From positions 62,001-126,000 of the IMG/VR virus record IMGVR_UViG_3300027573_000779: a stretch of 64,000 nucleotides of DNA. One strand, given 5' to 3'. A program made the position numbers and the translations under genes. Within the stretch, counting starts at the first letter, position 1. Every line of letters begins with the position of its first letter. Below the pieces are notes generated by a model. That model was given only the letters and a program-made list of their open reading frames with translations. It made no database searches and was not told the origin of the DNA. Below are positions 4,805 to 64,000 of this stretch, piece by piece.

Positions 4805-4807
4805 ATC

Positions 4808-4837
4808 TTGATTAGTTTACCAAGACTCGACTATTAT
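4808..4837 (+). promoter_or_regulatory. Candidate sigma-70-type promoter
   Basis: TTGATT-N18-TATTAT in an intergenic gap, 7 nt before ATG 4845. Confidence 0.45.
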
Positions 4838-4844
4838 TAGAATA

Positions 4845-40706: not shown

Positions 40707-40709
40707 TAA

Positions 40710-41231: not shown

Positions 41232-41232
41232 A

Positions 41233-43443: not shown

Positions 43444-43446
43444 TAT

Positions 43447-46911: not shown

Positions 46912-46937
46912 TTAATTTCAGTGTAAAATTAAAAGAT

Positions 46938-47773: not shown

Positions 47774-47774
47774 A

Positions 47775-48209
47775 ATGGCAGATTTGGTTTCAACGGCAGA
47801 CAGAACAGCGTTTATTAGTGGTTTAATTAATCACTTTGATACGTTTAAAGCTCCAATTATAGTTCATAAAGAACCTTTGACTCAGGTGGTGAACGAGAAT
47901 CAAAATCCTTTTATGGGATATGGGCCAATTGAGACTGATGTAACTTATGTTCCAGTTAGCGGCACTTTTTACGCAATAAAAGTTACTCATGATAGTATAA
48001 ACAATAATAATCTACCAATTATTAACACTCAACTGCCAACCAACACTATAAGAGTTAAGGTCTCTGGAGACGCAAAAAACTACATTTCTCAAGGCAAAAC
48101 AACAGCAATTACTTTCTTGGGCGAAATGTATAATCAAATCAGCGTCCCAATGCCCAAAAACTTTCTTGGATTTATTTTTTATTATTACGATTTAACTAAA
48201 GTTGAATAA
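47775..48209 (+). CDS. Putative head closure/stopper protein
   Basis: Size and position in neck block. Confidence 0.4.
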   Translation: MADLVSTADRTAFISGLINHFDTFKAPIIVHKEPLTQVVNENQNPFMGYGPIETDVTYVPVSGTFYAIKVTHDSINNNNLPIINTQLPTNTIRVKVSGDAKNYISQGKTTAITFLGEMYNQISVPMPKNFLGFIFYYYDLTKVE

Positions 48210-48211
48210 AC

Positions 48212-48835
48212 ATGGCAAAATATACAACAATCAACATTAATGTCTTAAATAAAGCAATTCAAAAAACTGCTAAATCTAGGACTAATTTTATGTTTAACGC
48301 TGCTAGAACAAAATTTGTGGCCGCTAAACAGAATATGTTGCGTGAGTTTGATGAGCATCCCGTTACTCAAGAATTGAAAGCTGGTCCTGAAGCAGAAGGA
48401 AACCCAAGTGGCACTTTAGGTGGACGCGCCAATCTTTATGCTTTTATTGGTTTTCCTGCCGAAACAGAACCAACAGAGATTATAAGAAGTGCCTTAGAAA
48501 GCTTTGTTAATATCTTAAATAACCCTACAATAACCTTTGGTTACAGGTCCGCGACATTTAGTTTTTCTGTCGTATATCCTTCTTTAACAGAGATTTATAA
48601 AGCGACCCCTTCACCTTTTAGTAGCAAAAGTTGGGTTAAAGGGATTGAAGATGGCATGTGGGGATTAACTCATTATTTAAATGGACTATATACAAACCCT
48701 CCAAAAGACTTTAGTGATTGGTCTAGGTCGGGACCTGCTATTGAATCTAAGTCCCAAGTAAGAGCAGATTCGTTTGAAGCTCGCCCTTATATGAAAGAAA
48801 TTCTTGAACATTTTGTAGCAAGAGTCAGCACATGA
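48212..48835 (+). CDS. Putative neck/tail completion protein
   Basis: Position; C-terminal ARPYM motif typical of HK97 gp10-like proteins. Confidence 0.45.
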   Translation: MAKYTTININVLNKAIQKTAKSRTNFMFNAARTKFVAAKQNMLREFDEHPVTQELKAGPEAEGNPSGTLGGRANLYAFIGFPAETEPTEIIRSALESFVNILNNPTITFGYRSATFSFSVVYPSLTEIYKATPSPFSSKSWVKGIEDGMWGLTHYLNGLYTNPPKDFSDWSRSGPAIESKSQVRADSFEARPYMKEILEHFVARVST

Positions 48836-49686
48836 GACCTCAATATGCCAATAGATTAATTTCAAGTTTTAACCTCTGGTTTAATAATACTCTTTTGAGG
48901 GAGGGGCAGGCTTATCAAACCACAACCTCTATCTTTTACCCAATTGGACAGGTTTACTATGGACTTTATACCTATGCAACTCCTTACAATCAATTCGTTT
49001 CAGATTATTCAGTAACGGGCGCGACGATTATCACTGGGGTTTATTTAAACGGAACCTTTGTTTCAACTGGCGTAAGTGGTTTAAAGGCAATAGATTACGA
49101 AAACGGCAGGGTTCATTTTACTGGCCAATTACCCTCAACCATTAGAGTTAGCGGCACTTTTTCCTTTAAAGAATTTAATGTTCAAATAACCGAAGAACAA
49201 GAAGAAAAGCTCCTTTTTGAAACAAAGTATAGCCCGCGTCCAAAACTAGGACAAGCTCCAACAGGTTTATGGGCAAGCACTTGGACCTATCCTATTATCT
49301 TTTTAAAGAACGTTGCAAGCGACAATAAACCGTTTGCTTTTGGAGGACAAGATGACTCAATTTATCAAATTTCCGCAATGATACTAGCTGACAGCCAATT
49401 TAACTTAGATGCTTTAAGCTCATTATTTGTGGATAAAACAAGAACAATATTAGGAATGTTAAATGAAAACGAATATCCGTACAATGTCTATGGTAGTTTT
49501 AAAACAGGACTATATAACTATACTGGCCTTGTTGCTAATAAAGATTATTCTTTTATAAATGATATCCATATATCTAAGTTCCAACCCAGTATTTATAGTC
49601 AGATGAAATTAGTGAATCCCGGCATTCATTTTGGTGTAATTGATTTTGAGATTAGTAAGGTAAGATATCCTAGACTAGGAACTTAA
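48832..49686 (+). CDS. Putative tail terminator protein
   Basis: Immediately before the tail tube gene; YPIIFL...PFAFGG. Confidence 0.45.
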   Translation: MRPQYANRLISSFNLWFNNTLLREGQAYQTTTSIFYPIGQVYYGLYTYATPYNQFVSDYSVTGATIITGVYLNGTFVSTGVSGLKAIDYENGRVHFTGQLPSTIRVSGTFSFKEFNVQITEEQEEKLLFETKYSPRPKLGQAPTGLWASTWTYPIIFLKNVASDNKPFAFGGQDDSIYQISAMILADSQFNLDALSSLFVDKTRTILGMLNENEYPYNVYGSFKTGLYNYTGLVANKDYSFINDIHISKFQPSIYSQMKLVNPGIHFGVIDFEISKVRYPRLGT

Positions 49687-49746
49687 AATTACTGTTCTCA
49701 TATTAATAAAACAGTTGTAATTAAACTTAGAAAACAGGACTAATTT

Positions 49747-50853
49747 ATGGCAAGAAACAGAGTTATTTATCAATCAGAGGGTGTATTTGCTGGTCAAAGA
49801 ACCCCTTGCACCGGTGTTAATCATACTGGCGCGGCTGATGTAAAAGAAATTTATCGTGTCCAAAGCGCGAATTATTCATTCAACCTTGGAAAACGAGACG
49901 TTAATCAATTTGGTGAACTCGCCGCAATCGATAGGATTCTAGTTGACCCTCCTACCGTTTCGCTCGATTTTACCTATTTGCTGGCCAATGTCTATAATGA
50001 ACAGGCATTGGGAATGACAGTTGGGATAAGCACTAATCCTACATCTAATGCTTTTTCAGGCATTTTTGCGGGTGCCACCGACGAAAAAGCTTACTGGGTT
50101 AAGACGGTTGCCTATGGTACTGACCTTCACGGTCTACCGTCTACTGGTTATGTTTTCGGCGCAATTGGTTTTGGTAACGGGTATATTAGCTCGTACAGTA
50201 TTGACGCTGCCGTAGGAGATTTCCCAAGAGCGAGCGTTCGTGTTGACTGCTCAAACATGAAGTTTGACAACTGGCTCAGCACCGACGAAGCAAAACAAAG
50301 CCCTTGTGTTAATAAAGAAAATGGAACACTCATTGCCGCAGATACTTATAGACTTCCTTCTGGAACGTCTACAACTTCTGCCCTTGACCAAACCACCGTT
50401 CTTCGTCCCGGTGACGTAGTTATGACTTGGGATAATGCCGCTGCGGCCACTATGGGCACGGCTATTAACGATGCCAAAATTCAAAGTTTCACTTTGTCTA
50501 GTGATATTTCTAAGACTCCGTTGAATAAGCTTGGAAGCAAGTTTGCATATTCGCAAGAAACCAACTTCCCAGTTACTGCCAGCCTTCGAATTACTGCTGC
50601 TGTGGGTGATATGAACACCGGTTCTCTTACCCAACTTCTGGAATCTACTGGAGTTAATACTGTGGGTGTCAAAATTTTTGCTCCTACGGGTTCTACCGTT
50701 AACTTCGGCTTTGACCTTAAGGGTGCTCAGCTTGATAGCCAAGAATATAGCTCCAGTATCGGTGATAGCAAAACTGTAACTATGAACTTCAGTGTTCCTA
50801 TTGCAGGCGCTAACGACCTTACTCGTGGTATTTTCCTAAGCGGAAGAGTCTAA
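49747..50853 (+). CDS. Major tail tube protein
   Basis: RVQSANYSF...DVNQFGEL; precedes chaperones and tape measure; followed by a strong terminator. Confidence 0.75.
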   Translation: MARNRVIYQSEGVFAGQRTPCTGVNHTGAADVKEIYRVQSANYSFNLGKRDVNQFGELAAIDRILVDPPTVSLDFTYLLANVYNEQALGMTVGISTNPTSNAFSGIFAGATDEKAYWVKTVAYGTDLHGLPSTGYVFGAIGFGNGYISSYSIDAAVGDFPRASVRVDCSNMKFDNWLSTDEAKQSPCVNKENGTLIAADTYRLPSGTSTTSALDQTTVLRPGDVVMTWDNAAAATMGTAINDAKIQSFTLSSDISKTPLNKLGSKFAYSQETNFPVTASLRITAAVGDMNTGSLTQLLESTGVNTVGVKIFAPTGSTVNFGFDLKGAQLDSQEYSSSIGDSKTVTMNFSVPIAGANDLTRGIFLSGRV

Positions 50854-50874
50854 TCCTGTTGTAAAATAAACTAG

Positions 50875-50907
50875 ATAAGCCCGAAGAAATTCGGGCTTAT
50901 TTTTTTT
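50875..50907 (+). terminator. Intrinsic terminator
   Basis: ATAAGCCCGAA-GAAA-TTCGGGCTTAT then T run. Confidence 0.92.
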
Positions 50908-50966
50908 GTTCTTTTTTTGGGAAACCTTGTGTAAAGATTAGTAGGTAAAAGGTCAGTTCCAAGGTT

Positions 50967-51281
50967 ATGGACATAAATAGTGAAAATCTGAAAGATTATA
51001 TTCTCTTTCATGTAACTAGAAAGATAACAAATCTTTATAAACATATACTTTTTATTCTGGAAGATTTGCGCGATGAAAAGTATTCAATGCAAGACCCAAA
51101 GAGTTATTCGCAAACCAGAAAACGGGTTTTGGATTTAGGAAATGACGCCATAAGAGAAATTAACGAACATTTTAAACATTTAGAGGTACAAATTAATGAA
51201 AACAAAACCCAATATCCAATCGGTGATTCGGGAACGTTTGTGTTTGCAAAGTCTTCAAAAAACAATGGAAGAAAAGTTTAG
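50967..51281 (+). CDS. Hypothetical protein
   Basis: Preceded by TGTGTAA at 50928 and AGGTAAAAGG. Confidence 0.6.
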   Translation: MDINSENLKDYILFHVTRKITNLYKHILFILEDLRDEKYSMQDPKSYSQTRKRVLDLGNDAIREINEHFKHLEVQINENKTQYPIGDSGTFVFAKSSKNNGRKV

Positions 51282-51429
51282 GGTGACGCCCAAGCTCGAA
51301 TATATTAAATCTACAGCTTTTTTAATTAAATTTAAAAACTGGGATGATAGCACTAAAAAAGACTTTATTAAAAATTTAGGCGGAAAGGTAAATTTTAAAC
51401 AAACACAGGAGTTTTTAAATACATTATGA
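51265..51429 (+). CDS. Small hypothetical protein
   Basis: Fills the gap; ATGA overlap with next gene; start uncertain. Confidence 0.4.
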   Translation: MEEKFRVTPKLEYIKSTAFLIKFKNWDDSTKKDFIKNLGGKVNFKQTQEFLNTL

Positions 51430-52151
51430 AAAAATTGCACGAGTTCACGGTATATAAGGAAACCGAAATAGAAGTTACGGTAAAGGATGAAAACGATAAG
51501 GACGTAGTAAAAAAGGAAAAGAAACGCGAGCCTTTTAAGTATTTTATCGCTAAACCTACCCGAAATCAAATTGATGAAGCAGACTTTTTCTATGCTCAAA
51601 AGTTTAATGAGGCGGCTAAAGCAGGACTTTTAACTAGAGCCTTGCTCGCTAAACGTTATTCAAACGATGGCGGCTCAATGAGTGAACCGGATAAAGAACA
51701 GTATGTATCGCTTTATACCGCCCTTTTTACCAAGGAAAATGAATATAAATCTTTAGCCGGTTTGCCGGAAGATAAGCAGGACAAGGAGAAAATAAAGAAA
51801 GTTACAGAAGAAATTATTGAGCTTCAAAAAGAAATTCAAGATTTTGAAGCTACCCAAATGAGTCTTTACGACCAAACTGCCGAAAGTTGGGCTAGGAATA
51901 AAACTATTCTTTGGTGGGTTCTTTTCCTGTCATATAAGTATACTGACGGCGAAAATTTTGAACCTGTTTTTAAAGGCCAGATTTTTGAGGAAAAAGACGC
52001 TGTTTATGGGGAAATTTGGGATTCAGAGGATAGTTTTCAGTTGGAAGTTGTTAATAAATTTGTCTTCTTTGTTAGTTTTTGGTATACAGGTCGCGCCAAT
52101 AAGCCAGAAGATTTTGCCGAAATAGCTAAAAGATTTGAACCAGAGTCCTAA
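51426..52151 (+). CDS. Putative tail assembly chaperone (gpG-like)
   Basis: Charged helical protein between tube and tape measure genes. Confidence 0.55.
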   Translation: MKKLHEFTVYKETEIEVTVKDENDKDVVKKEKKREPFKYFIAKPTRNQIDEADFFYAQKFNEAAKAGLLTRALLAKRYSNDGGSMSEPDKEQYVSLYTALFTKENEYKSLAGLPEDKQDKEKIKKVTEEIIELQKEIQDFEATQMSLYDQTAESWARNKTILWWVLFLSYKYTDGENFEPVFKGQIFEEKDAVYGEIWDSEDSFQLEVVNKFVFFVSFWYTGRANKPEDFAEIAKRFEPES

Positions 52152-52172
52152 AAATAAACTAACGTCCTGTTC

Positions 52173-52201
52173 GGCCCTTACCTAAAGTAGGGGCTTTTTT
52201 T
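52173..52201 (+). terminator. Intrinsic terminator
   Basis: GGCCCTTAC-CTAAA-GTAGGGGCT then T run. Confidence 0.8.
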
Positions 52202-52204
52202 GTA

Positions 52205-53221
52205 GTGAATAAACTAGATGAAATTAAACATAAAATTGCTCTTGCTGATATTTTAGTAGGTTATTCCACAGTAATATTTAATAATCAAACCATCTATATC
52301 AAACATTTTACCTTTCAAGAACACCTAAAAGTTGAACAAGAATATGAAACAAGCTTTGAAATAGCTGTTAAAAAGGGCGTTCCAACCATTGAAGACAAAA
52401 TAAAAGAACTTATTAAAGAAAAAGAGTGGACCGACGAAGAAGAAAAACAGTTCCAAAAACTTCCTCAAGATATAGGTATTTTAAAAGATACCAAGAAAAA
52501 ATTCTTCTTGGAAAAAGACGTGGAAAGAATTGATAAAAATATTAAGGCTGAAGAGGAGAAATTGCAAAAATTGGAGACTAAAAGAAACAGCCTATTAGGT
52601 TACACCGCAGAAACTTACGCAACAAAAAAAACTAACGAACTGTTTGTTTTTCATACCTTTAGAAATCAATTAGAACTAGATAAAACTTTATATTCTTGGG
52701 AAGAGTTTAATGAGTTGGATGAAAGTCAAATGGGCGATTTAATTAATCTTTTTAATAAAGATTGCGTTAGATTTGCCCCTCAAGAGATGAAAAAAACAGC
52801 TATTTTAAACTCTCACATGCAAATGATTTATTTGGCGGGAGAAGATTTGTGGAACTTTTATGGTAAGCCGGTAGTTCAATTTACCGCCCGTCAAAGCGAG
52901 CTTTATAGCCTAGGACGTTATTTTAAAGGACTTATTTCGGACTTAAAAGATAAGGTCACTAGCGATGTTTTAGACGACCCGGATAAACTAATTCAATATG
53001 TAGACTCTCAAAAAGCCGCTGAAACCCTTGGAACCGCCAAAATTCCTGAAGGAAAAGAATCAATTGGAGGAGGAACGGCTATTGTGGGAGCTTCCACTGA
53101 AGATTTAAAGAAATTAGGCTTAGATAAAGAAAAGGGCGCTGATAGTTTGGCTGAAGAAGCTGGAAAGAAAGGCGGCTCTTTAAATATGGAAGATTTATTA
53201 AAATTACACGGTTTGGTGTAA
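52205..53221 (+). CDS. Putative tail assembly chaperone (gpT-like)
   Basis: Directly before tape measure; FYGKPVVQFT..Q..L and DDPDKL motifs. Confidence 0.55.
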   Translation: MNKLDEIKHKIALADILVGYSTVIFNNQTIYIKHFTFQEHLKVEQEYETSFEIAVKKGVPTIEDKIKELIKEKEWTDEEEKQFQKLPQDIGILKDTKKKFFLEKDVERIDKNIKAEEEKLQKLETKRNSLLGYTAETYATKKTNELFVFHTFRNQLELDKTLYSWEEFNELDESQMGDLINLFNKDCVRFAPQEMKKTAILNSHMQMIYLAGEDLWNFYGKPVVQFTARQSELYSLGRYFKGLISDLKDKVTSDVLDDPDKLIQYVDSQKAAETLGTAKIPEGKESIGGGTAIVGASTEDLKKLGLDKEKGADSLAEEAGKKGGSLNMEDLLKLHGLV

Positions 53222-53242: not shown

Positions 53243-56200
53243 ATGGCCAATGATGGAGTAAGAGTACCTGTAGTACTAGAGTGGAATCAAGCGATTCAAG
53301 ACTCTATAGCACAGGCACGAAGAATCCCGCCAGTTAACGTTAGAGTTAATACTGGCCGGATTGGAGATGGTTTTAAACACGCGTCTAAAGAGGCCGAACA
53401 GTTTGAACGAGCCTTAGCTAGCGCCCAAACCCGCGTTTTAACCCTCGGGGCGTCTTTCGGCGCTCTGTTCGCAATTCAAAGAGGCTTTAAAGCCTTAATC
53501 CAAACAACCATTGATGTTGAAAAGCAGCTTAAAGACATTAATGTTATTTTGGGAGTAAGCACAAGCAGTCTTAGCACCTTTTCTGAGCAACTGTTTGGTA
53601 TAGCTAAAAATACCGGCCAAAGCTTTGAAACAGTAGCTAAAGCCGCCTTGGAATTTAGCCGCCAAGGTCTTGGAGTTCAAGAAACTTTAAAAAGAACCAA
53701 TGACGCCCTTATTTTAACCCGCCAAACTGGATTAGATGCCGCTGAAGCAACCGACGCTATCACTGCCGCTATTAACAGCTTTAGTCAAGCTGCTCTGACT
53801 TCAAGCGATATTGTTAATAAGTTTGCTAAGGTTGACCAAAACTTTGCAGTTAGTTCCGCTGACTTAGCAGAAGCTATTAAACGGGTGGGTTCTAGCGCTG
53901 AAGAAGCGGGAGTAGGAATTGATGAACTTATTGCTTTAGTTACCTCTGCCCAACAAATAACTCAACGTGGCGGTGCTGTAATTGGTAACGCTTTTAAGAC
54001 TATTTTTACTCGTACAGCCAGACCCCAAGTGCTTAATGACCTTGAACAACTTGGAATTACTGTCAGAAACGCTCAAGGAGATATTCTCCCGGCTGTTCAA
54101 ATCCTCACAAATTTGGCGAACAGTTATGATAATTTAAGTCAGGCCCAACAATCTGCCGCCGCTGAACTTGTAGGGTCTGTTTATCAAATTAACATTTTAA
54201 AAGCTTCTTTAAAAGATTTGGGTAAAGAACACTCGTTTTACTCTAAGGCTCTCAATGACTCTTCAACCGCAACTGACGAAGCTGTTCAACGTAACGAAGC
54301 TTTAAATACAACTCTAGCGGCTTTAATTAATAGAACTAAAGAAAACGTAAGGCAGTTTTCGGCTAATGTGGGACAGGACACTTTTGGCCCTTCAATTCGA
54401 AGAGTTGCTGGTCTTGCTAATGGTTTCTTGGAAAATGCTAATAACATTTTAGGTGCCGATAAAGCTGAAGTGGCTTTTAAAGAAATTGGTTCAGTTCTTG
54501 GAAAAGGACTGGTTAGGGGTTTTGGACAGTTCTTACAAGGTCCGGGTTTGGCGCTGATTGGTGTTGCACTGTTTAAATTTGCCAGTCAGTTCGCAAGGCT
54601 GGCAACAGAAGCTTATAAACTTTTGACTGACCTTAACAAAAGCACTGACCAAAGGGCCGCTATTGAGTCTCGCGTTTTAGGCGTTTTAAGACAAGAGCCT
54701 AATATTTATAGCCAAATACTAGGAAATAGTTTAAGTGTTGTTCAGGCACAAGAAAAGGTTCTTCAAATTATAACGGCACAAAATGCAGCCTTAAACGCCC
54801 AAAAAGCAATAGCTTCACAACTAACATCCACCCTCATTAATACTGGCGCAGTAGGAGTCAATCCTAAGACTAGGGAAGTGGTGACCAATCCAGCTTTAAA
54901 AAAAACACGCTCAGAAGGTAGCATTCCGAACTTTGCGGTAAATATTTTGGACGCTCAAAAGGAAATTGAAGGCGCTTATAAAGCTAAATACATTCCCGGC
55001 CAAGTGCGCCAAGTGGGAGACGCAGTAATTAATAATGCAGAAAGTATTAAAACTAGCGCCGCACACCCCCAAGAAAAAGCTATAGTGCCGCCTCAAGGCA
55101 GCGAAGCGGGACAAAAATACAAAGAAGCTTATCGAACTATTTATGGTAAAAGCCCTTATGGGGATGCAATTACCAAGGGGAGAAACGCTTTTCAGGTTCA
55201 GTGGATGAAGTCAATCGGCGCTAAAAGAGGGTTGGATTTAACTAATCCAGATAATATTTTAGTGCTTGCAAAACAGTTCAGAGAAACCTATGGGTCACAA
55301 CAGGGGCTGTTGCCATTTAATAAAGGAAAGGTGCCAAGTTTTGCCTCTAGTTTAACTTTATCAACTTCAAAAAACTTTGTTAAACTCGCAAAAGAAAGGG
55401 GTGTCAAAATTGTCAGAGAAGACCAGAGGGTTCCCCAAGGTAGTGCTTTTTATATTCGTTCTGGCGCAGAAGGAAAGAAAATAGTTCTTCCAAAAAAGAC
55501 TCCTATTGATGTTCTTGCTCATGAAGTAGGACACGACCTTTCATATGATTACTTAAATATATACTCTCCAAGACTTTTAAAAGAACAATCAGCTAACATC
55601 GAAGCCTTAAAAAGAATTCCCACAGAAAAAGAAAGACAGGGATATCGTGAAACACTAAGTCCTGCAACTAAAACATATAAAATTGGAATATTAAGAGGTA
55701 TTTTGAAGGATTTTGCTCCTAATATAGACGACGAAAGTATTTTTATTAATGAACTCAGAAAGCAGGAAGGCAAACATTCTGATAGATATTCCCCCGTAAT
55801 AAGAGCGCACAGTACCGCTTTGCGTGCTTTGATAAAAGATATAGGACCAAAAAAAGTAAAAGAGATATTGTCACAATTGCCCGAAATAGACAAAACCGAT
55901 TTAAAAAGAAAACCTTACGCTTCGGGGCACGTTCCAAACTTCAACCTCTTCAGTAAGGTTTCTACTGAAGACGAAGCTAACCGAATGGTTAAAGTCTCTT
56001 CGGTTAACGCGCTGAAGCCTTATTTGAAGAAATCAGAAGGTGATGTGCCAAATTTTGCCTCAGGGCGCGTCCCGAACTTTGCTTCTAGTTTATCTCTTTC
56101 AACTAGTAAAAAACTATTAAGGGAAGCTAAAAAAACAGGAATAAAAACACTAAGAACCAACGAACCAATACCTTATTATGATATTCCTTCGAGTTCGGTT

Positions 56201-59200
56201 CGCGCTCCAAAAGGAACTTCTTTTGATGTTATTGCGCACGAACTTGGTCACGGATTTTCTTATCAGGAAAACCCCCTTCTGGAAAGAGTGCGTTCAGATA
56301 TAAAATCAGAAGTGGGCGCTAATACTGAAATTTTAAACAGATTATCAGGAAAAGAAAAGAAATCATTTGCTAAACAAATGCTTAATCCTTTTAAAACCTA
56401 CAAGATAACATCTTTAGTTGATTCTTTAAGAGGACTGGTTCCCCTACCTGAGATGGTCAAAATCATTGGACAACACAGAATAAGAACCAAAGATTTAGGA
56501 AAAAGAGCCGGGGATTTAGGTAATTATAGTGATTTTAGAAAATCTCAATCACAAGTTCTAAGAGACATTGTTAAGACAGTGGGACCACAAAAAGTTAAAG
56601 AGCGCATTTCGAATCTTTCACCGGTTAATAAACAAGACTTAAAGGCGCGTTATTTTGCTTCAGGGCGAGTGCCCAACCTTGCCAAAAGTTCCTACTCTTT
56701 GGTTCATAGTACAACTCCACAGTTGGCTAAGACAATAGAGTCAGAGGGCCTTAAACCTAGAAGAAAAGAGGGCTTTGAAAAGGGGTATTTTTCGCAACAT
56801 GTTACTAACTTTGAGAAACTTGCTGAAGAAGTCAGAGCAAGCGAGTTTCCTGATTTGCCTAGTAGACTAAACTCGGTTTATTTAACTCCAGAAAGTCGAA
56901 AATTTAATAGGTTTGGAACGCATTTTAAAGTTGCCCCAAATAAAGAAAGCTATATTTTCAACTTAAAAAAGATAGATAAAGCTTTTGATTTAGCGGGTCC
57001 TTATGGGACGAGCACTGTTCCAAATACTAAATTACGCGAACTTGCTCGTGAATATTTCCAATCCGGCATTCCTTTAAATAGACAAAATCTAAATAAAGTT
57101 TTAGAAAAAGAGAAAGAAAATACGGGTTATGACTATGGAGACAATCCTTTTTTTGAAATCCTGACGCCGGGACCAGTTTCAGCTAAAAAAATAAAAAGGC
57201 TTAACTCAAAAGGCGCGGTTCCAAACTTTAATATTGATGTTAATGGTATTTTTTCACAACTTCCTGAGCGTGAACGCGTTGTAATAGAAGAACACGCCGA
57301 TGGATTAAAATTGGGCGAAATTGCAAAGAAATATAATATTTCAAGAAATAAAGCAAGCTCTATTTTCAATCGCGGACGTAATAGTTTTATAAAGCAATAC
57401 GGTTTGGCTAAAAAGGGTTTTGGAGAGTTCGCGGCACAAGGTAAAATCCCAAACTTTGCTAAAATCTACAAACTTCGCACTGGATTTCCTGAACATATTT
57501 TAAAACAAATTCAATCATTACATGGTAAACAATTACGAATATTTCCGACTAAGGACCACTTTCCTAAAGAGTTGCGAAACGATATTATAAAGTATGGAGA
57601 AAACAATATTCCCAAGTTTGACCCAAACTTAATAATCGACAGTAATGAAATTATTGAAGTTGAACACGATGATAATATTCGAGGACTTCATGGAACCAAT
57701 ATTGAGAAAATTGTAGTAAAGAAAACAACGCCTTATTTAGACCAACATCTGGCAATTGCCAAAGATGGCGGTATTAAGAGTATTTGGCACACTTTAAATC
57801 CAGACAGGTTTAATAAACCACAAAATCCTAGAAATAGAATTTATAGTCAGGGCCAAGTGCCGAATTTTGCTTCTTCATTTTCTAATATCAGTTTAGCAAA
57901 AGCTCCACATAATTCTACTGCGATAAGAAGACTGGGAATACCAAAAACCGGCAGTTATGCTTCCTATTACTTTGACAGGAATAAACACATAAACATAAGT
58001 TTCATTGAATCTAACCAAAAAGGGGACGCTTTTAGGTTATTTAAAGCTTTGGGGCGCACCGCCCGTAGAATTAAGCGTCCAATTATAAGTGAAACTCTAG
58101 TCAAATCGTCCAAACAACCTGACGAAAACCAAACTAATTGGGAACAACTTTTAGTAAGATATCCTCAATTACGCTACCGGGACTTACCAAACGCTTCAAC
58201 CAATGGGGTTTTTCGGCCAAATCTTCTAGGAAGTGAAGAACGAAGCTTTAACACCTTTGAAGAACTAAAAACTATAGTAAACCAAGTTCCTTCAGATATT
58301 TTCAAAAAAAACCTTAGAACAGGATTCACAAGTGTCGGCAACCTCTCCACTACTTTTAAAAACAAAGGGCAAGCGCCAAATTTTGCTTACATTCCATTCA
58401 TTTCTCCTCTTGTCGGGCGCGTGGTGACTAATTTGGTGCATTCTGGCGAAGGTTTTAGTATGGCGGCTTTAAAACCTGCTTTTAATTTTGCTAAGGAAAA
58501 GGGCATAAAACAAACGATTAAAAATATTATTTTAGACAAACCGGCGCACCAAGGAACTTTTTTTGGTTTTAACGAAGAAGGAAGAGAAGACTTCGGCTTG
58601 TCCGAATTTGGTTTTCGAAAAATGTTTGGTTTGGAACCTAGAATTCCACCAAATCCAGAAGTTAAACTCCGTCAAATTCCGGGCAAGAAAAACACCTATG
58701 CAATAGGTGGAAGAAATCCACTACAAAATTTTGGAGTTAATCTAACAACAAAAACTCCTCAAAATGTTAGATATCGCCCTCAAGACCCAAATACAATTAG
58801 AAGTTTGTTTAGGAGTCCAGATTTCGGAGCTTTTAACCTAGATGCCAACACCAAAAACAGAAAAATTCGCTATTCTGACACTTGGGATTTTGCACTCCAT
58901 GGGAGCGAAAAGTTGAATTTTAAGGAATTAAAAGACGAACTAAAAAGACGTTTTATTAGACAGCCCGAACTTGAATCTATCAAAGATGAATTTAAATTAA
59001 ACGTTCTTCCAAAAGTTTTAAAACAAAACCCTTTAAAAACAATTAAGGATATTAAAGAACTTTTTCCCAAAAACAGACTTAAGAGTGTTTTGAATCCTGC
59101 GAATCTTGTTTTCCAAGGTAATGCGGGAGCCAGTCTTTTTACTAATGAGCCGGTTCATTCTTATGGTAGTTCACAGTTAACAAAACTGTTTAGGAAGCTA

Positions 59201-62200
59201 GTAAACAGTGTCTCGTCACCAGCAACATTCGTAGGCCAAGTTACAAATCCCGATGACAAAAAACTTCTTTTTGATAGTCTTACTGACCTTGCAAATAGCG
59301 ATATAGACCTTCAAAAAACCAAAGCTACGCCTGCCGCCAAATTTTTAGGTACAAAATATAAACAAAACAAATTAAAAGAATCATTTATAACACTTCAGGA
59401 TAGATTGTATAATAGATTCAATTTTAATCCTTCTTCAAAACGTGATTTTAGTAATCGCAAGGACGCTTTTCCAATTGGCAAGCCGGGAATCAACATTTTT
59501 TCGGCTATAGAAAAATATGGTAGAGCCAAAGGTGAAGTGCCAAATTTTGCTTCCTCTTTGCCTTTATCAACCGCCAAAGAATTATTAGCTCTAGCCAAAG
59601 AAAGAAAGATTCGCATTACTAGAGATAAAGAACTTGGAGCTTTTCATAGATTTTCAGAAAGAAGAATTAATCTTCCTAAAGGCGAATCAATTGAAACTTT
59701 CGCGCATGAATTGGGTCACAGTTTATCTACCGATAATTTTTATAAATTTGCTAATGCAAATCGGATAGAAAGAGAAGTAATGGCTAATCAAGAGATTGTC
59801 CAACGACTGGTTGACCCAAAAGAACAAGAAACATTTAAAACAAACACTCTTGAATCTTTTAAATCTTATAAAAGCGGAATAATACTAGAACGGGTTTGGC
59901 CACAATTGCAAATTCCAGAAGAAAAACGCAATCAATATATTGAAATTCAACAAAAAGAATTTAAAAAAACTCAGAGAAGTAAAGGTATAAGTCCAGAGCA
60001 TCGAAGTAGCGCTGCTGTATTACGAAAACTTGTTAAAGATTTTGGGCCAAAAACCATAAAACAACTTATTAGTTCCACTCCCCGCGACGAGAGGGAAGCT
60101 TTAAAACTGCGCTATTCTTTTGGAAAAATCCCTAGTTTTGCCGTAATGAGTCCGCAGGAAAAAGCCTTTAAAGATATCGCTTTAAGACTAAATTCAGAAA
60201 AACATATAGGATATGGCCCACAAAAATATTTTTTACCATTTTTGTCTGATAAAACCGTAAATCCCTATCAATCATTATATTATAGCACCCCATACGAACA
60301 ACAACAAACAAAAAAAGAAGAAGTTGAAAAGAAACTAATAAATTTTATTCCCGAAGGTAAAAATTTCCTAAGACCATATAACAATATTCTACAGCAAGCC
60401 CCCGCTGTTAAAGATGCTTACAGGTTTGTAAGAAACCTTTTTGGTGATTTTGCTGGTCGTGGTTCTGGCGACCCTCTTGAGCGTTCTGCAAACAACTATT
60501 TGAAGATAATGCGTGGTTTACAAAAAACCGGTGTTTTTAAAGAAATAAACAAACTGTCGCCGCAACAATTATTAAGAGGAGGGATAAAATCAGGTAATCT
60601 TTCTCTATACGGTTTTGGGGGAGACCCCCTTCCTGAATCAAAATTCAAAACAAGAGCTTTGGAGTCTGGCAATCGCGACCTTGTGGCTAACGACCCATTA
60701 TATTCGTTTCATCAAAGGTTTGAAAGTAAAAAAGAAGAATTAAAACTAAGAAAACAGTTTAAAGCTTTTACAAGCTCCTTTGTAAACTCTGTTTCTAAAT
60801 TCAGGAACATTCCAAGAATAAAAAATAAACTTGAAGAAATAACTGGCGGTGACCATACAAGACTAGCCCTAACTGCAAAAAAATATATTCCGCCTGAAAT
60901 TTATGAACGTTTAGCTTACCTAAGCAAAACCTTTGTAAATACAAAACGGCAGGCTTATAATCTTGGTGTAGACATTGATTCTCCATTTTACTTTCGTGGA
61001 CAAAGTAGAAGCGAAGCGGCAATTTTAGACAAACTTAAAGAATTTACCTCTTTGGGATTTGCAAGTCAGACAGATAGATTAGGCGTTACTTTAAATAATA
61101 ATCCATTGTTTGCTGCTGCTTTTGGCGTTACTTCCGGCAAAGAGTTTGGAAAACCGGGGTTATTGGGAATTTATAGAAAAAAACAAATCGACAGTAGAGA
61201 ACCAAGAAGGCTAGGAGAAAACATCTCTTCTGGCAGGCTTAGAATAGATGACCTGTTTGGTTTTATTGATTTGGCGGCTCAAAAATTTGTTCCAGCGTCT
61301 TCTCTAAGTAAAGTATATGGTCCAGAACACGCGCCCTCTTCTGAAATTCTGGAGAAAACCAAATCTTTGCTAAGTAAAGAAGATTACGACATAATAAAAT
61401 CTCAAAGTTTACATAAAGATTATAATCCAAACACACAATTAACTCTTACAAGAGGATTAGATGTTCGTAGAGGAAAGAAAATATCAGACTACCGTGGTCC
61501 AAGTCAAACTAACCCCAATCTTGGCGAACTTTCTTTTAAAGAGTTGCTTGACTATCTAAAACACTCAATAGATACTACCCAACCGGGAGTTATTCCAACA
61601 GGTGGGCCAGAAAGTTCTTTTGCAAATGTCAGTTCTGACGCTATTTTAGTTAAAAACCGAAAAACCGCTAAAGAATTAGAAAATAAACCCGTTCAAAAAG
61701 AGGGACAGGCGCATTTCCAAAGGCTGGTCAGTCAATCAGAATTATTCGGATACGACAGACTACAAAACCTTTTTGATAACCCAAATCTTTCAACAGAAAG
61801 AAAAAACAAACTGTTGAGAAGCGGAATCGTTGTTAATCTTCCTGAAATTAGAGGGCAAATTGGATATAGAACGGCAGCACCCGAACGCGAATACCCAATT
61901 TTAACATCAACCCCAAAAACTTCTGGACCTGTAAATATTGGCAGATTATTTGCTGTTTCGCCTTATATATTCAAAAAATCAGGTTATTCAAAAGGAAAGT
62001 TGCCAAACTTTGCAAAAGCTCCGCAATTTTCTCAACTTCAATTAAAAGAAATTTTGGGCGGCTCAACTGAAGCTAGAAAAGCTGTTTTCCAAGACAGTCA
62101 ATTTGTTTTAAAATACGGAAAATCTTCTGGTCACGCTATAAATGAATTTGTTTCAAATAGATTATTTAATGCTTTTGGCGAAAACGTGCCCGAAGCTCAA

Positions 62201-64000
62201 TTAATTGACACTCCTCAAGGTAAAGCCTTTCTGTCTAAATTCATCCAAAGTCAATCTTTTGGAGAACTGTATGATAAAGGAGATATTAATACAAGACAAA
62301 GATTAATTCAAGGAGTTAAACCTTCTTTTGCGGCTCATGCGGCCTTTGCTAATTGGGACGCATTTGGCGATTGGAATCCAGCAGGAGCCAATGTAAGACT
62401 AGATTCAAATAATAGACAGTTTTTTGTGGACTTGGGTGGGGCTTTAGCTTATAGAGGTTTGGGCGCACCTAAACCCAATTTTGGTCCAGAAGTGCCCGAA
62501 CTGCGTTCTCTTATTGATTATGCATCTAATCCTTATGCTAAAGCCGCTTTTAAATTTCAACCAGAAGAGCTAAAATCTAATGTTGCCGATTTTCTAAAAA
62601 GAACTCCGTCAAATTTAAGCGGTTTGTTAGAGTCTTTAAATAGTGAAACCCAAGGGGACCCACATATCACTAAAGCACTAAAACAAATTCCTAATCGTTT
62701 AAATTATCTTAGAAACTTTATTAAATCCAAAGGTTCTATCCCAAATTTCGCGTTCTTTTCAGGAATAGCTTCTGTCGCGCAATCACTTACAGGAGCTAAA
62801 AAACTTCCAAAACAAAACATTCGTGCTAACATTACTCCCGAAGAAATGGAGGCAATCTATTTTAATTACGCTAAAACCATTTATAATCCTCAAAAAGGAA
62901 AAATCCCAGTAGGTTTAAATTATTTTGCGAACAAGGCTTTCAATTCCGCGATGTTTGAACATCAAGGCTCTTATGTTTTTGGTTCTCACGATAACGAGTT
63001 GTTCCTTCCAACTCACTTTGCTCCAAAAAGCTTAAAGGGCGGATTTGCGGCGCAAAAAGCATTAAGTGAATATTCTAATGTAATGTATGCCGTAACTCAG
63101 GAAATGACCCCAATGCTAGAAAGACTTGGGTTCAGTGTGGCTAAATCTGGAGTTAAAGTTCCCTTCAGGGGCGGAACTGCATTAAAAGACTTTTTGGTTT
63201 CTGATAAACTGCGAACCCCAATGTTTCTTACCAATTTCCTTTCTCAAATGAAACAGGGAGCGGGTTCTAAATACGTTAAACAATATTTAACAAGAGAAGA
63301 CCAAGCTAAATTTAGTCATTATTATCCTTATGGTGGGGGAACTCCGGGCGAAGATGAAGCTATTGAATACTTAAGAAACAGAGGAATTACAGCTAATCAG
63401 GGCAAAATTCCTTCGTCTAATGCGTATTTAAAAGCTAAGTTAACGCACGTCCCCAATTTTGCTCTTCTTGACTCTCTTAGGAGTTTAATTGATGTTCAAA
63501 ACAATAAGTTTTTGGGTTCGAAATTACCCAATACACTTGGAGAAATTTACCCTGTTATAAGGGACCAATTTCCTAAAATAGGACCAATCTTAAAGGGAAT
63601 TAACCCTAGATTACTACTAGATGATATTAATGTTGATAGTGGGACATTATATCGAGGTTTTGCTAGAGCTGTGCGCTCAAAAACATATGACGGTCCTTTT
63701 AGAGCATATGACAGTCCTATTAAACCCTCCGAAACCGTCACAGGTGAACTTGACTTTTTATATAACTTTACGCACGCTTTAAATAGAGGCCAACCGTTAA
63801 AATTCCAAAAAGCCTCGCTAGAAGCCCTGTTCCAAATTGGCGCTCAAGCAAAACAAGAAGGGATAACTGATAAAGTAGGTATCAATACAAATAGCGACCC
63901 ATTTTTTAGAAACCTCGGAAACCCGCAACAACATAGAGATTTTGCACGAAACTTTTTAAATTTAGATAAATCAAAACCCAATCAATCCTTTATTCAAAAA
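53243..64000 (+). CDS. Giant tape measure protein fused to an array of enzyme-like modules (3' truncated; absent from ORF track)
   Basis: Hand translation from ATG 53243 shows no stop in 3586 codons. First ~560 aa are TP901-type tape measure (AALEFSRQG, NFAVSSADLAEAIKRVGS, GAVIGNAFKTIFTR); the rest is modules separated by GxVPNFA linkers. Confidence 0.93.
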   Translation, partial: MANDGVRVPVVLEWNQAIQDSIAQARRIPPVNVRVNTGRIGDGFKHASKEAEQFERALASAQTRVLTLGASFGALFAIQRGFKALIQTTIDVEKQLKDINVILGVSTSSLSTFSEQLFGIAKNTGQSFETVAKAALEFSRQGLGVQETLKRTNDALILTRQTGLDAAEATDAITAAINSFSQAALTSSDIVNKFAKVDQNFAVSSADLAEAIKRVGSSAEEAGVGIDELIALVTSAQQITQRGGAVIGNAFKTIFTRTARPQVLNDLEQLGITVRNAQGDILPAVQILTNLANSYDNLSQAQQSAAAELVGSVYQINILKASLKDLGKEHSFYSKALNDSSTATDEAVQRNEALNTTLAALINRTKENVRQFSANVGQDTFGPSIRRVAGLANGFLENANNILGADKAEVAFKEIGSVLGKGLVRGFGQFLQGPGLALIGVALFKFASQFARLATEAYKLLTDLNKSTDQRAAIESRVLGVLRQEPNIYSQILGNSLSVVQAQEKVLQIITAQNAALNAQKAIASQLTSTLINTGAVGVNPKTREVVTNPALKKTRSEGSIPNFAVNILDAQKEIEGAYKAKYIPGQVRQVGDAVINNAESIKTSAAHPQEKAIVPPQGSEAGQKYKEAYRTIYGKSPYGDAITKGRNAFQVQWMKSIGAKRGLDLTNPDNILVLAKQFRETYGSQQGLLPFNKGKVPSFASSLTLSTSKNFVKLAKERGVKIVREDQRVPQGSAFYIRSGAEGKKIVLPKKTPIDVLAHEVGHDLSYDYLNIYSPRLLKEQSANIEALKRIPTEKERQGYRETLSPATKTYKIGILRGILKDFAPNIDDESIFINELRKQEGKHSDRYSPVIRAHSTALRALIKDIGPKKVKEILSQLPEIDKTDLKRKPYASGHVPNFNLFSKVSTEDEANRMVKVSSVNALKPYLKKSEGDVPNFASGRVPNFASSLSLSTSKKLLREAKKTGIKTLRTNEPIPYYDIPSSSVRAPKGTSFDVIAHELGHGFSYQENPLLERVRSDIKSEVGANTEILNRLSGKEKKSFAKQMLNPFKTYKITSLVDSLRGLVPLPEMVKIIGQHRIRTKDLGKRAGDLGNYSDFRKSQSQVLRDIVKTVGPQKVKERISNLSPVNKQDLKARYFASGRVPNLAKSSYSLVHSTTPQLAKTIESEGLKPRRKEGFEKGYFSQHVTNFEKLAEEVRASEFPDLPSRLNSVYLTPESRKFNRFGTHFKVAPNKESYIFNLKKIDKAFDLAGPYGTSTVPNTKLRELAREYFQSGIPLNRQNLNKVLEKEKENTGYDYGDNPFFEILTPGPVSAKKIKRLNSKGAVPNFNIDVNGIFSQLPERERVVIEEHADGLKLGEIAKKYNISRNKASSIFNRGRNSFIKQYGLAKKGFGEFAAQGKIPNFAKIYKLRTGFPEHILKQIQSLHGKQLRIFPTKDHFPKELRNDIIKYGENNIPKFDPNLIIDSNEIIEVEHDDNIRGLHGTNIEKIVVKKTTPYLDQHLAIAKDGGIKSIWHTLNPDRFNKPQNPRNRIYSQGQVPNFASSFSNISLAKAPHNSTAIRRLGIPKTGSYASYYFDRNKHINISFIESNQKGDAFRLFKALGRTARRIKRPIISETLVKSSKQPDENQTNWEQLLVRYPQLRYRDLPNASTNGVFRPNLLGSEERSFNTFEELKTIVNQVPSDIFKKNLRTGFTSVGNLSTTFKNKGQAPNFAYIPFISPLVGRVVTNLVHSGEGFSMAALKPAFNFAKEKGIKQTIKNIILDKPAHQGTFFGFNEEGREDFGLSEFGFRKMFGLEPRIPPNPEVKLRQIPGKKNTYAIGGRNPLQNFGVNLTTKTPQNVRYRPQDPNTIRSLFRSPDFGAFNLDANTKNRKIRYSDTWDFALHGSEKLNFKELKDELKRRFIRQPELESIKDEFKLNVLPKVLKQNPLKTIKDIKELFPKNRLKSVLNPANLVFQGNAGASLFTNEPVHSYGSSQLTKLFRKLVNSVSSPATFVGQVTNPDDKKLLFDSLTDLANSDIDLQKTKATPAAKFLGTKYKQNKLKESFITLQDRLYNRFNFNPSSKRDFSNRKDAFPIGKPGINIFSAIEKYGRAKGEVPNFASSLPLSTAKELLALAKERKIRITRDKELGAFHRFSERRINLPKGESIETFAHELGHSLSTDNFYKFANANRIEREVMANQEIVQRLVDPKEQETFKTNTLESFKSYKSGIILERVWPQLQIPEEKRNQYIEIQQKEFKKTQRSKGISPEHRSSAAVLRKLVKDFGPKTIKQLISSTPRDEREALKLRYSFGKIPSFAVMSPQEKAFKDIALRLNSEKHIGYGPQKYFLPFLSDKTVNPYQSLYYSTPYEQQQTKKEEVEKKLINFIPEGKNFLRPYNNILQQAPAVKDAYRFVRNLFGDFAGRGSGDPLERSANNYLKIMRGLQKTGVFKEINKLSPQQLLRGGIKSGNLSLYGFGGDPLPESKFKTRALESGNRDLVANDPLYSFHQRFESKKEELKLRKQFKAFTSSFVNSVSKFRNIPRIKNKLEEITGGDHTRLALTAKKYIPPEIYERLAYLSKTFVNTKRQAYNLGVDIDSPFYFRGQSRSEAAILDKLKEFTSLGFASQTDRLGVTLNNNPLFAAAFGVTSGKEFGKPGLLGIYRKKQIDSREPRRLGENISSGRLRIDDLFGFIDLAAQKFVPASSLSKVYGPEHAPSSEILEKTKSLLSKEDYDIIKSQSLHKDYNPNTQLTLTRGLDVRRGKKISDYRGPSQTNPNLGELSFKELLDYLKHSIDTTQPGVIPTGGPESSFANVSSDAILVKNRKTAKELENKPVQKEGQAHFQRLVSQSELFGYDRLQNLFDNPNLSTERKNKLLRSGIVVNLPEIRGQIGYRTAAPEREYPILTSTPKTSGPVNIGRLFAVSPYIFKKSGYSKGKLPNFAKAPQFSQLQLKEILGGSTEARKAVFQDSQFVLKYGKSSGHAINEFVSNRLFNAFGENVPEAQLIDTPQGKAFLSKFIQSQSFGELYDKGDINTRQRLIQGVKPSFAAHAAFANWDAFGDWNPAGANVRLDSNNRQFFVDLGGALAYRGLGAPKPNFGPEVPELRSLIDYASNPYAKAAFKFQPEELKSNVADFLKRTPSNLSGLLESLNSETQGDPHITKALKQIPNRLNYLRNFIKSKGSIPNFAFFSGIASVAQSLTGAKKLPKQNIRANITPEEMEAIYFNYAKTIYNPQKGKIPVGLNYFANKAFNSAMFEHQGSYVFGSHDNELFLPTHFAPKSLKGGFAAQKALSEYSNVMYAVTQEMTPMLERLGFSVAKSGVKVPFRGGTALKDFLVSDKLRTPMFLTNFLSQMKQGAGSKYVKQYLTREDQAKFSHYYPYGGGTPGEDEAIEYLRNRGITANQGKIPSSNAYLKAKLTHVPNFALLDSLRSLIDVQNNKFLGSKLPNTLGEIYPVIRDQFPKIGPILKGINPRLLLDDINVDSGTLYRGFARAVRSKTYDGPFRAYDSPIKPSETVTGELDFLYNFTHALNRGQPLKFQKASLEALFQIGAQAKQEGITDKVGINTNSDPFFRNLGNPQQHRDFARNFLNLDKSKPNQSFIQK
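54917..63463 (+). repeat. Dispersed in-frame linker repeat G-x-[VILA]-P-[NS]-[FL]-[AN]
   Basis: Copies start at 54917, 55325, 55925, 56039, 56063, 56663, 57212, 57440, 57851, 58367, 59531, 60122, 61994, 62732 and 63443 (THVPNFA), with a degenerate copy at 63401. Confidence 0.92.

What the first reader, a model, noticed from the sequence alone, without database searches (positions are those of the whole stretch)
62015..62731. HipA / PI3-4-kinase-like kinase module with intact catalytic motifs
Seen: Gly loop LGGSTEA (62054), FVLK, NEFVSNRLF...VPE, catalytic ANWD...N (62348) and VDLGGALAYRG (62426). Established: this order defines atypical HipA/PI-kinase-like kinases found as toxins and effectors. 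Inference: an injected kinase, functionally analogous to the T7 gp0.7 host-modifying kinase but delivered as protein.
Basis: partly seen in the sequence, partly recalled or inferred. Interest (0 to 1): 0.78.

Follow-up and report, generated by a model that had tools for sequence, protein, structure and literature searches.

The report
Kinase cargo inside giant tape measure
The stretch encodes a real, apparently intact atypical protein-kinase domain. It is one of about fifteen cargo modules threaded into a 5,468-residue tail tape measure protein of an uncultivated 209-kb groundwater phage, so the tail probably carries it into the host at infection.

Summary

All eight residues invariant across the 75-member alignment are present, including the Lys, Glu, Asp, Asn and Asp of a kinase catalytic core. 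It does not pass the tests for the HipA or PI3/4-kinase families. It belongs to a large family with no Pfam model (2,295 cluster representatives). That family usually sits in MuF- or portal-fused "polyvalent" phage proteins alongside ADP-ribosyltransferase and NUDIX domains.

Here the carrier is different. The module lies in one 5,468-aa tape measure protein, exactly between two copies of a conserved linker, G-x-(V/I/L)-P-N-F-A. The protein has 17 copies of this linker; about 0.04 are expected by chance. At least 294 related giant tape measure proteins share the backbone. The 119 whose sequences I examined also share the linker but carry other cargo, and none has this kinase.

Delivery into the host, release from the polyprotein and the substrate are all inferred. 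I rate this a new variant of a known kind, with interest 0.6.

The parts
53243..64000 (+). Giant tape measure protein ORF. It runs 5,649 nt beyond the window end; the full ORF is 16,407 nt and 5,468 aa.
   Evidence: ORF listing. PF10145 PhageMin_Tail at E=1.8e-26. 25-27% identity to annotated tape measure proteins of Bacillus and Lactococcus phages. Relatives are named TP901-family tape measure protein by JGI.
53603..54163 (+). PhageMin_Tail (TP901-type tape measure) core domain, aa 121-307
61994..62014 (+). Upstream linker motif GKLPNFA (aa 2918-2924)
62015..62731 (+). Atypical protein-kinase-like cargo module (aa 2925-3163)
   Evidence: Family search, alignment A1, AF2 model at pLDDT 93.7, fold matches, independent HMM at 137 bits.
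62054..62074 (+). Gly-rich nucleotide loop LGGSTEA. The second Gly is invariant in the family.
62111..62113 (+). Invariant Lys 2957 (FVLK), the predicted ATP-phosphate-binding Lys
   Evidence: 75 of 75 sequences
62144..62146 (+). Invariant Glu 2968 (NE), the predicted alphaC Glu
   Evidence: 75 of 75. This is the only region that aligns with HipA at sequence level.
62351..62392 (+). Catalytic loop NWDAFGDWNPAGAN, with invariant Asp 3039 (62357) and Asn 3050 (62390)
62429..62437 (+). DLG motif, with invariant Asp 3063 (the predicted metal-binding, DFG-like Asp)
62732..62752 (+). Downstream linker motif GSIPNFA (aa 3164-3170)
55325..55945 (+). HExxH (zincin-like) module, paralogue 1, flanked by linker motifs
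   Evidence: Paralogy at E about 1e-30, alignment A4, weak Reprolysin hits.
56063..56683 (+). HExxH (zincin-like) module, paralogue 2
59531..60142 (+). HExxH (zincin-like) module, paralogue 3

Best explanation
Window 62015-62731 encodes a self-contained atypical protein-kinase-like domain of about 240 aa. It has a reduced helical C-lobe, and its nearest solved relative by fold is CtkA. The full catalytic set is present: Gly loop GGST, Lys 2957, Glu 2968, Asp 3039...Asn 3050 and Asp 3063.

The domain is one cargo module of a 5,468-aa tape measure protein in a 209-kb phage from groundwater whose tail looks siphovirus-like. In this protein a conserved N-terminal part of about 700 aa and a conserved C-terminal part of about 1,800 aa bracket an array of about 15 unrelated modules. 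The C-terminal part contains the hydrophobic, membrane-inserting segments. The modules are separated by the linker G-x-(V/I/L)-P-N-F-A.

Inferred mechanism: the tape measure protein lies in the tail tube and is expelled into the cell envelope ahead of the DNA. The cargo array follows in unfolded form. The kinase then refolds in the host, perhaps after cleavage at the linkers. There it uses ATP to phosphorylate a host target, most likely Ser or Thr residues of a protein, to help the infection get established.

Shown: the fold, the conserved catalytic residues, family membership, tape measure identity and the linker-bounded modular layout. Inferred: enzymatic activity, the substrate, delivery and release.
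For: Fold:
- AF2 model with pLDDT 93.7 and pTM 0.91.
- Foldseek gives TM 0.63 to CtkA and 0.63-0.68 to Rickettsia RP146/RC0188.

Catalytic residues:
- All eight invariant columns of a 75-member alignment are present.
- The departures D108H and R137F covary in other members of the family. That points to a maintained structure rather than decay.

Family:
- 2,295 representatives.
- Of 52 full-length members, 23 carry Phage_Mu_F, 3 carry portal domains, 9 carry ADP-ribosyltransferases and 6 carry NUDIX.
- The same domain occurs in Gordonia phage proteins and in a 'portal protein' at TM 0.7-0.8. It also occurs in cellular proteins named only for their ADP-ribosyltransferase or NUDIX domains.
- Iyer et al. 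2017 (PMC5512222) describe injected polyvalent proteins that include kinases, released by embedded metallopeptidases.

Carrier:
- PF10145 match.
- Hydrophobic segments occur only in the C-terminal backbone.
- Phage-tail_3 and BppL_N genes lie upstream, and no sheath or MuF was found.
- At least 294 giant relatives share the N- and C-terminal backbone but have shuffled cargo.

Linker:
- 15 strict copies against 0.04 expected by chance.
- It is found only in this ORF of the genome.
- It is conserved as a peptide and not as DNA.
- It flanks both ends of every HExxH module copy and of the kinase.
Against: - No biochemical evidence exists for this family. The ATP-docking attempt produced nothing.
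- The module sits on a long branch. It replaces three near-invariant second-shell residues: D108H, D125A and R137F.
- How folded-domain cargo totalling about 3,200 aa fits in a tail tube is unexplained.
- The cargo could be cleaved off before assembly and never be delivered.
- The HExxH module, a candidate release protease, occurs in only 4 of 120 related tape measure proteins. Its fold match to metalloproteases is not significant.
- The kinase fold also supports small-molecule and lipid kinases and non-kinase chemistries.
- The host is unknown.
Confidence: 0.6

Rival explanations
1. It is an active phosphotransferase, but its substrate is a small molecule, nucleotide signal or lipid rather than a protein. 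In that case it would resemble APH or choline kinases or LepB-type lipid kinases, for example by neutralising a host immune messenger or altering the envelope.
For: Weak APH, choline-kinase and PI3_PI4_kinase hits recur in the family. Language-model neighbours include LepB_N clusters. The family co-occurs with NUDIX, ADP-ribosyltransferase, RelA_SpoT and pyrophosphatase domains that act on nucleotides.
Confidence: 0.2
2. The kinase acts in the producing cell or is never delivered. The cargo array would be cut away during tail assembly, much as some tape measure proteins are trimmed, or it would serve assembly itself, for example by phosphorylating phage proteins.
For: Folded domains cannot fit in a tail tube. 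The linker motif could be an assembly-time processing site. No data place the cargo in virions.
Against: The same kinase family is overwhelmingly attached to virion-anchoring domains (MuF, portal), for which injection is the accepted reading (PMC5512222, PMC9503650). Cargo varies freely between closely related tape measure proteins, which fits host-directed effectors better than an assembly function.
Confidence: 0.13
3. It is a catalytically dead pseudokinase or a mere spacer that adds length to the tape measure.
For: It sits on a long branch and has three substitutions at near-invariant positions. Tape measure length sets tail length.
Against: Every universally invariant catalytic residue is retained. 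The substitutions covary in other members. A spacer would not need to preserve a kinase active site at about 30% identity to its relatives.
Confidence: 0.05
4. It is a HipA-type toxin of a toxin-antitoxin pair that phosphorylates an aminoacyl-tRNA synthetase.
Against: The score is below the Pfam cut-off. There is no HipA N-terminal domain and no HipB or HipS neighbour, and the module is embedded in a structural protein. hhalign against E. coli HipA gives a probability of only 5.9%.
Confidence: 0.02

Closest known systems
CtkA (JHP0940) of Helicobacter pylori, a Ser/Thr kinase encoded on the tfs3 conjugative element and dependent on its type IV secretion system (PDB 3AKJ/3AKK/3AKL; PMC5536186)
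   Different: There is no detectable sequence similarity, even with a family profile. CtkA is a free-standing protein delivered by a type IV secretion system to eukaryotic cells. It is not a segment of a phage tail protein.
Kinase domains of phage and plasmid 'polyvalent proteins' (Iyer et al. 2017, PMC5512222), and MuF-fused effector proteins
   Same: - Same concept: many effector domains in one virion-associated polypeptide, injected with the DNA, with embedded metallopeptidases proposed to separate them.
- Relatives of this kinase are mostly in MuF or portal fusions with ADP-ribosyltransferase and NUDIX domains.
- The family is common in Verrucomicrobiota and Chlamydiales genomes, as that paper reports for its kinase.
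   Different: - The carrier here is a tape measure protein, not MuF or portal. The genome has no detectable MuF.
- The paper's text never mentions tape measure proteins (its term count).
- The signature the paper describes for its kinase (loss of the C-lobe, a conserved Gln, an insert between a conserved His and Asp) does not obviously fit this family's NWD...DN loop.
- I could not obtain their alignment, so whether the two families are the same is unresolved.
HipA/HipT toxin kinases
   Different: No N-terminal HipA domains, no antitoxin, below the Pfam threshold, and a different catalytic loop.
Tape measure proteins with embedded enzymatic motifs, and the tape-measure-related modular effector Sle1 of contractile injection systems (PMC13277306)
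   Same: A tape measure scaffold carrying exchangeable functional modules that are expelled from a tail-like tube.
   Different: Those carry one functional domain. This protein carries about 15 modules totalling about 3,200 aa, separated by a dedicated linker motif, and includes a kinase.
T7 gp0.7 protein kinase
   Same: A phage kinase thought to act on host proteins at the very start of infection. This functional analogy is also drawn in PMC5512222.
   Different: gp0.7 is expressed from an early gene and is not packaged. It belongs to a different sequence family. The analogy is inference only.

Membership tests
Protein-kinase-like superfamily (fold level) | Bilobal fold: N-lobe beta-sheet with alphaC helix, hinge, and a catalytic loop and metal-binding loop in the C-lobe | tested here: met
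Protein-kinase-like superfamily (fold level) | Gly-rich loop, ATP-binding Lys, alphaC Glu, catalytic Asp with downstream Asn, and metal-binding Asp | tested here: met
   G2940, K2957, E2968, D3039, N3050 and D3063 occupy columns that are invariant in 75 of 75 family members.
Protein-kinase-like superfamily (fold level) | ATP-dependent phosphotransfer | not testable with these tools
   The complex-prediction job with ATP and Mg was not folded.
HipA toxin family | Match to HipA_C or HipA_2 above Pfam's gathering score | tested here: not met
   13.4 bits against a cut-off of 30.5, covering only profile positions 19-67. hhalign to E. coli HipA gives probability 5.9%.
HipA toxin family | N-terminal HipA domains and an adjacent HipB or HipS antitoxin gene | tested here: not met
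   The module begins at the Gly loop directly after a linker motif and lies inside a 5,468-aa ORF.
PI3/PI4-kinase family | PF00454 match and a DRHxxN catalytic loop | tested here: not met
   This module has no PF00454 hit, and only 1 of 75 relatives has a weak one. The loop reads NWD-x9-AN. PI3K structures reach only TM about 0.44.
CtkA-like kinases | Sequence homology to CtkA | tested here: not met
   No PDB sequence hit with the single sequence or with the family profile at E<=10. The similarity is structural only.
Polyvalent (multi-effector, virion-delivered) phage proteins, in the sense of Iyer et al. 2017 | Several unrelated effector domains in one polypeptide that is anchored to a virion component | tested here: met
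   About 15 linker-bounded modules, including a kinase, three HExxH modules and a sigma70_r4-like HTH, within a tape measure backbone. The anchor is a tape measure rather than MuF or portal.
Polyvalent (multi-effector, virion-delivered) phage proteins, in the sense of Iyer et al. 2017 | An embedded metallopeptidase able to separate the domains | tested here: inconclusive
   Three paralogous modules have invariant HExxH plus a downstream Glu. Pfam hits are weak, the model is mediocre and the fold matches are not significant.
Tail tape measure protein | Tape measure core domain, position in the tail gene block, and hydrophobic segments | tested here: met
   PF10145 at E=1.8e-26. tblastn hits to annotated tape measure proteins. 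Synteny with a relative's tail genes. Hydrophobic segments at aa 4056-4080 and 5244-5263.

The most novel reading that the evidence does not exclude
A widespread lineage of uncultivated phages from groundwater, freshwater and marine samples has turned the tape measure protein into a multi-effector delivery polyprotein. In this it is functionally akin to MARTX toxins or MuF polyvalent proteins. Interchangeable cargo domains (kinase, GNAT, ADP-ribosyltransferase, ParB, peptidase and others) are strung between copies of a dedicated A/S-x-G-x-(I/V)-P-N-F-A linker. The linker would serve as the processing or docking signal that lets cargo be threaded through the tail and released in the host. The kinase here would then be the first recognised tail-lumen-delivered phage kinase.
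Probability: 0.35. Interest if true: 0.8.

Novelty: new variant of a known kind. Interest (0 to 1): 0.6.

Why it matters
Phage proteins injected with the DNA decide the first minutes of infection, yet few have been characterised. This case does three things.

- It defines a large family of phage-borne kinase domains that has no Pfam model, and gives it a confident structural model.
- It shows the family riding in a different vehicle, the tape measure protein, in a phage that lacks the usual MuF carrier.
- It exposes a conserved linker peptide that marks module boundaries in the 120 giant tape measure proteins I examined.

If the linker is a cleavage or docking signal, it gives a direct experimental handle on how large protein cargo passes through a phage tail. 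It would also be a natural cassette system for loading proteins into tails.

Tried and rejected
- PHROGs, NCBIfam and PADLOC give no hit for the module.
- PDB sequence searches with the single sequence and with the family profile give nothing relevant.
- tblastn of the module against 50,697 GenBank phage records gives no match at 1e-5.
- hhalign of the family profile against E. coli HipA aligns only the alphaC region, with probability 5.9%. I therefore did not use it to transfer catalytic residue numbers.
- Complex prediction with ATP and Mg was not folded and counts as no evidence.
- I tested whether the three HExxH modules are the universal protease for the linker. I rejected this as a general rule because only 4 of 120 related tape measure proteins have the module. 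Its AF2 model (pLDDT 72) gives only non-significant metalloprotease-like hits, and its profile finds nothing in PDB.
- I tested whether the linker is a DNA-level recombination repeat. I rejected this because synonymous codons differ between copies and there is no tandem DNA repeat.
- I looked for signs of recent acquisition of the kinase. The GC and GC3 of the module match the rest of the ORF.
- A word-based search for other giant proteins with a close copy of this kinase finds only the protein itself.
- Atlas searches of the two downstream modules (aa 3172-3402 and 3409-3722) give nothing usable.
- PHROGs on ten upstream structural ORFs gives nothing.
- Host inference failed. Cluster members carry no organism names, and the kinase is about equally distant (about 30% identity) from all bacterial homologues.

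Full report
**Observation**

The window is bases 62001-126000 of a 208,933-bp virus record that CheckV rates complete. The reported stretch lies in a single open frame that starts at window 53243 and is still open at the window end. Fetching the downstream DNA shows that the frame is 16,407 nt, or 5,468 aa.

LGGSTEA starts at 62054, FVLK at 62102 and NEF...VPE at 62141. ANWD starts at 62348, and the loop's Asn is at 62390. VDLGGALAYRG starts at 62426. There are no stops, and the standard code suffices.

The same DNA occurs without differences in contigs from freshwater-sediment runs of other studies. The apparent source is a groundwater metagenome.

**Is it a kinase?**

Curated libraries barely see the module. 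Pfam gives only HipA_C at 13.4 bits against a cut-off of 30.5, and PHROGs, NCBIfam, PADLOC and PDB sequence searches give nothing.

An exhaustive phmmer search finds 2,295 representatives at E<=1e-3. Almost all are domains inside proteins of 250 to 7,100 aa, and some carry two to five copies.

A 75-member alignment has eight invariant columns: G16, K33, E44, D115, N126, D139, G141 and G150. Our sequence has all eight. They fall in the pattern GGST ... VxK ... HxxxE ... NWD-x9-(D)N ... xDxGG. A profile built without our sequence scores it at 137.5 bits.

So the fold and the catalytic constellation are those of an atypical protein-kinase-like enzyme. Three near-invariant second-shell residues differ in our copy: D108H, D125A and R137F. 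D108 and R137 change together in other members too (H/F three times including ours, N/M once). I read that as a compensated contact rather than decay. The module sits on a long branch of the family tree.

**Which family?**

It fails the tests for HipA. It scores below threshold, has no N-terminal HipA domains and no antitoxin, and hhalign gives probability 5.9%. It also fails for PI3/4-kinases, with no PF00454 match and no DRHxxN loop. It shares no detectable sequence similarity with CtkA.

Its own family has no Pfam model. Of 52 full-length members, 23 carry Phage_Mu_F and 3 carry portal domains. Nine have ADP-ribosyltransferases, 6 have NUDIX, and others have RelA_SpoT or a pyrophosphatase. 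BFVD shows the same domain (TM 0.7-0.8) in Gordonia phages Sixama and GodonK, and in proteins named portal or ADP-ribosyltransferase. AFDB clusters show it in cellular proteins named only for their ART or NUDIX parts.

One relative has five copies plus an ART and sits next to a siphovirus tail gene. Another, in a bacterial genome, has three copies plus NUDIX, a tyrosine phosphatase and an SH2 domain. In species genomes the family is commonest in Verrucomicrobiota. It is also present in Chlamydiales, Planctomycetes, Cyanobacteria, Chloroflexota, actinomycetes, Legionella and Patescibacteria.

This is the world of the 'polyvalent proteins' of Iyer et al. 2017. That paper reports a distinctive kinase in such proteins, mainly in Verrucomicrobia-Chlamydia and Bacteroidetes (PMC5512222). 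The phyletic match suggests it may be the same family. Their verbal signature does not clearly fit, however, and I could not see their alignment.

The host ORF is a tape measure protein. The evidence is:
- PF10145 at aa 121-307 with E=1.8e-26.
- 25-27% identity to annotated tape measure proteins of Bacillus, Lactococcus and Staphylococcus phages.
- Hydrophobic segments only in the C-terminal third.
- Upstream genes with Phage-tail_3 and BppL_N.
- No detectable sheath.

Between aa 559 and 3801 the protein contains 17 copies of G-x-(V/I/L/A)-P-(N/S)-F-(A/N). Fifteen of these match the strict pattern, against 0.04 expected from shuffles. The motif occurs in no other ORF of the genome. Its codons vary between copies, so selection acts on the peptide.

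The kinase lies exactly between copies at aa 2918 and 3164. Three paralogous 200-aa HExxH modules each begin and end at a copy. Other modules include a sigma-70 region-4-like HTH.

**A lineage of giant tape measure proteins**

The N-terminal 560 aa finds at least 294 proteins of 3,000 to 7,750 aa at 40-54% identity. They come from groundwater, freshwater and marine metagenomes, on contigs of up to 203 kb. The closest ones share aa 1-700 and about 3630-5468 with ours, but their central cargo differs or is shuffled.

Across the 120 proteins I examined, the linker occurs 964 times, against 6 in shuffles. The median spacing is 177 aa and the consensus is [AS]-[SGK]-G-[FY]-[IV]-P-N-F-A. Precomputed Pfam lists show occasional GNAT, PF18760, ParB, glucosaminidase, pesticin and AAA_33 cargo.

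The kinase profile hits only our protein among the 120. None of the 149 best kinase relatives shares our tape measure backbone. The genome has no MuF and only this one copy of the kinase. I found no paper that mentions the motif.

**Mechanism**

The following is shown: a kinase-fold module with intact catalytic residues; membership of a family typical of virion-delivered multi-effector proteins; its position as a linker-bounded cassette in a tape measure protein; and cassette variability between related phages.

The rest is inferred from established knowledge. Tape measure proteins lie in the tail tube and are expelled into the envelope before the DNA. Iyer et al. propose that polyvalent proteins are injected and then separated by embedded metallopeptidases (PMC5512222). 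Tape-measure-related modular effectors exist in contractile injection systems (PMC13277306).

On that basis I infer that the cargo array leaves the tail unfolded with the tape measure protein. The kinase then refolds in the host, possibly after cleavage at the linkers, and phosphorylates a host target. Because the closest folds are Ser/Thr protein kinases, I favour a protein substrate. The frequent company of nucleotide-directed enzymes keeps a small-molecule substrate open.

Weak points are as follows. There is no biochemistry for this family. It is not known how about 3,200 aa of cargo is stored in the virion. The role of the linker is unknown. The HExxH module is rare in the lineage (4 of 120) and only doubtfully a peptidase.

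**Verdict**

The most interesting part is the carrier: a polyvalent tape measure protein with a dedicated inter-module linker, of which this kinase is so far a unique cargo. I rate it a new variant of a known kind, with interest 0.6.

Noticed in passing
window 54917, 55325, 55925, 56039, 56063, 56663, 57212, 57440, 57851, 58367, 59531, 60122, 61994, 62732, 63449 (first base of each motif; for 63449, the first base of THVPNFA). Two more lie beyond the window, at L002:11161 and L002:11395.: A repeated linker peptide G-x-(V/I/L/A)-P-(N/S)-F-(A/N) delimits every module of the tape measure protein. It is conserved across 120 related giant tape measure proteins (964 copies against 6 in shuffles). 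It is absent from all other ORFs of the genome and is encoded with varying synonymous codons. Its function is unknown: it could be a cleavage site, a docking site or a hinge.
   Followed up: partly
window 55325-55945, 56063-56683, 59531-60142: Three paralogous modules of about 200 aa have invariant HExxH and a downstream Glu. Each is bounded by the linker motif. They are candidate release peptidases, but only 4 of 120 related tape measure proteins have the module and its structural matches are not significant.
   Followed up: partly
window 57254-57379: A 76-aa cargo module contains a sigma-70 region-4 / LuxR-type helix-turn-helix (Pfam E=7e-4, below the cut-off). It may be a delivered transcription-factor-like module.
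   Followed up: no
window 56813-56986: A weak DUF2441 match lies in the module at aa 1141-1324. The precomputed Pfam list for the whole protein also names PF10386.
   Followed up: no
window 62753-64000 and beyond (aa 3172-3722): The two modules downstream of the kinase have no recognisable relatives in Pfam or in the Atlas. The second contains a GTLYRGF stretch that made me think of ADP-ribosyltransferases, but nothing supports this.
   Followed up: partly
proteins P0154-P0272 (relatives): At least 294 giant tape measure proteins (3,000-7,750 aa) come from groundwater, freshwater and marine metagenomes. They share conserved ends and have variable cargo, with occasional GNAT, PF18760, ParB, glucosaminidase, pesticin and AAA_33 domains. 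I found no publication describing this lineage.
   Followed up: partly
L006:8001-18251 (P0005) and L007:8001-17393 (P0006): One relative has five tandem kinase copies plus an ADP-ribosyltransferase and sits next to a Sipho_Gp37 tail gene. Another, in a bacterial genome, has three kinase copies with NUDIX, a tyrosine phosphatase and an SH2 domain, and a 2,506-aa paralogue lies beside it.
   Followed up: partly
window 993-2510, 7746-10361, 23070-27035, 27037-28341: The phage encodes a DnaB-type helicase and a bacterial-type DNA polymerase III alpha subunit. It also has a 1,321-aa Phage-tail_3 (lambda J-like) protein and a BppL_N-like baseplate protein. None of the ten structural ORFs tested upstream of the tape measure gene (window 37995-53221) has a PHROG match at E<=0.001 apart from one marginal hit of unknown function.
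   Followed up: no
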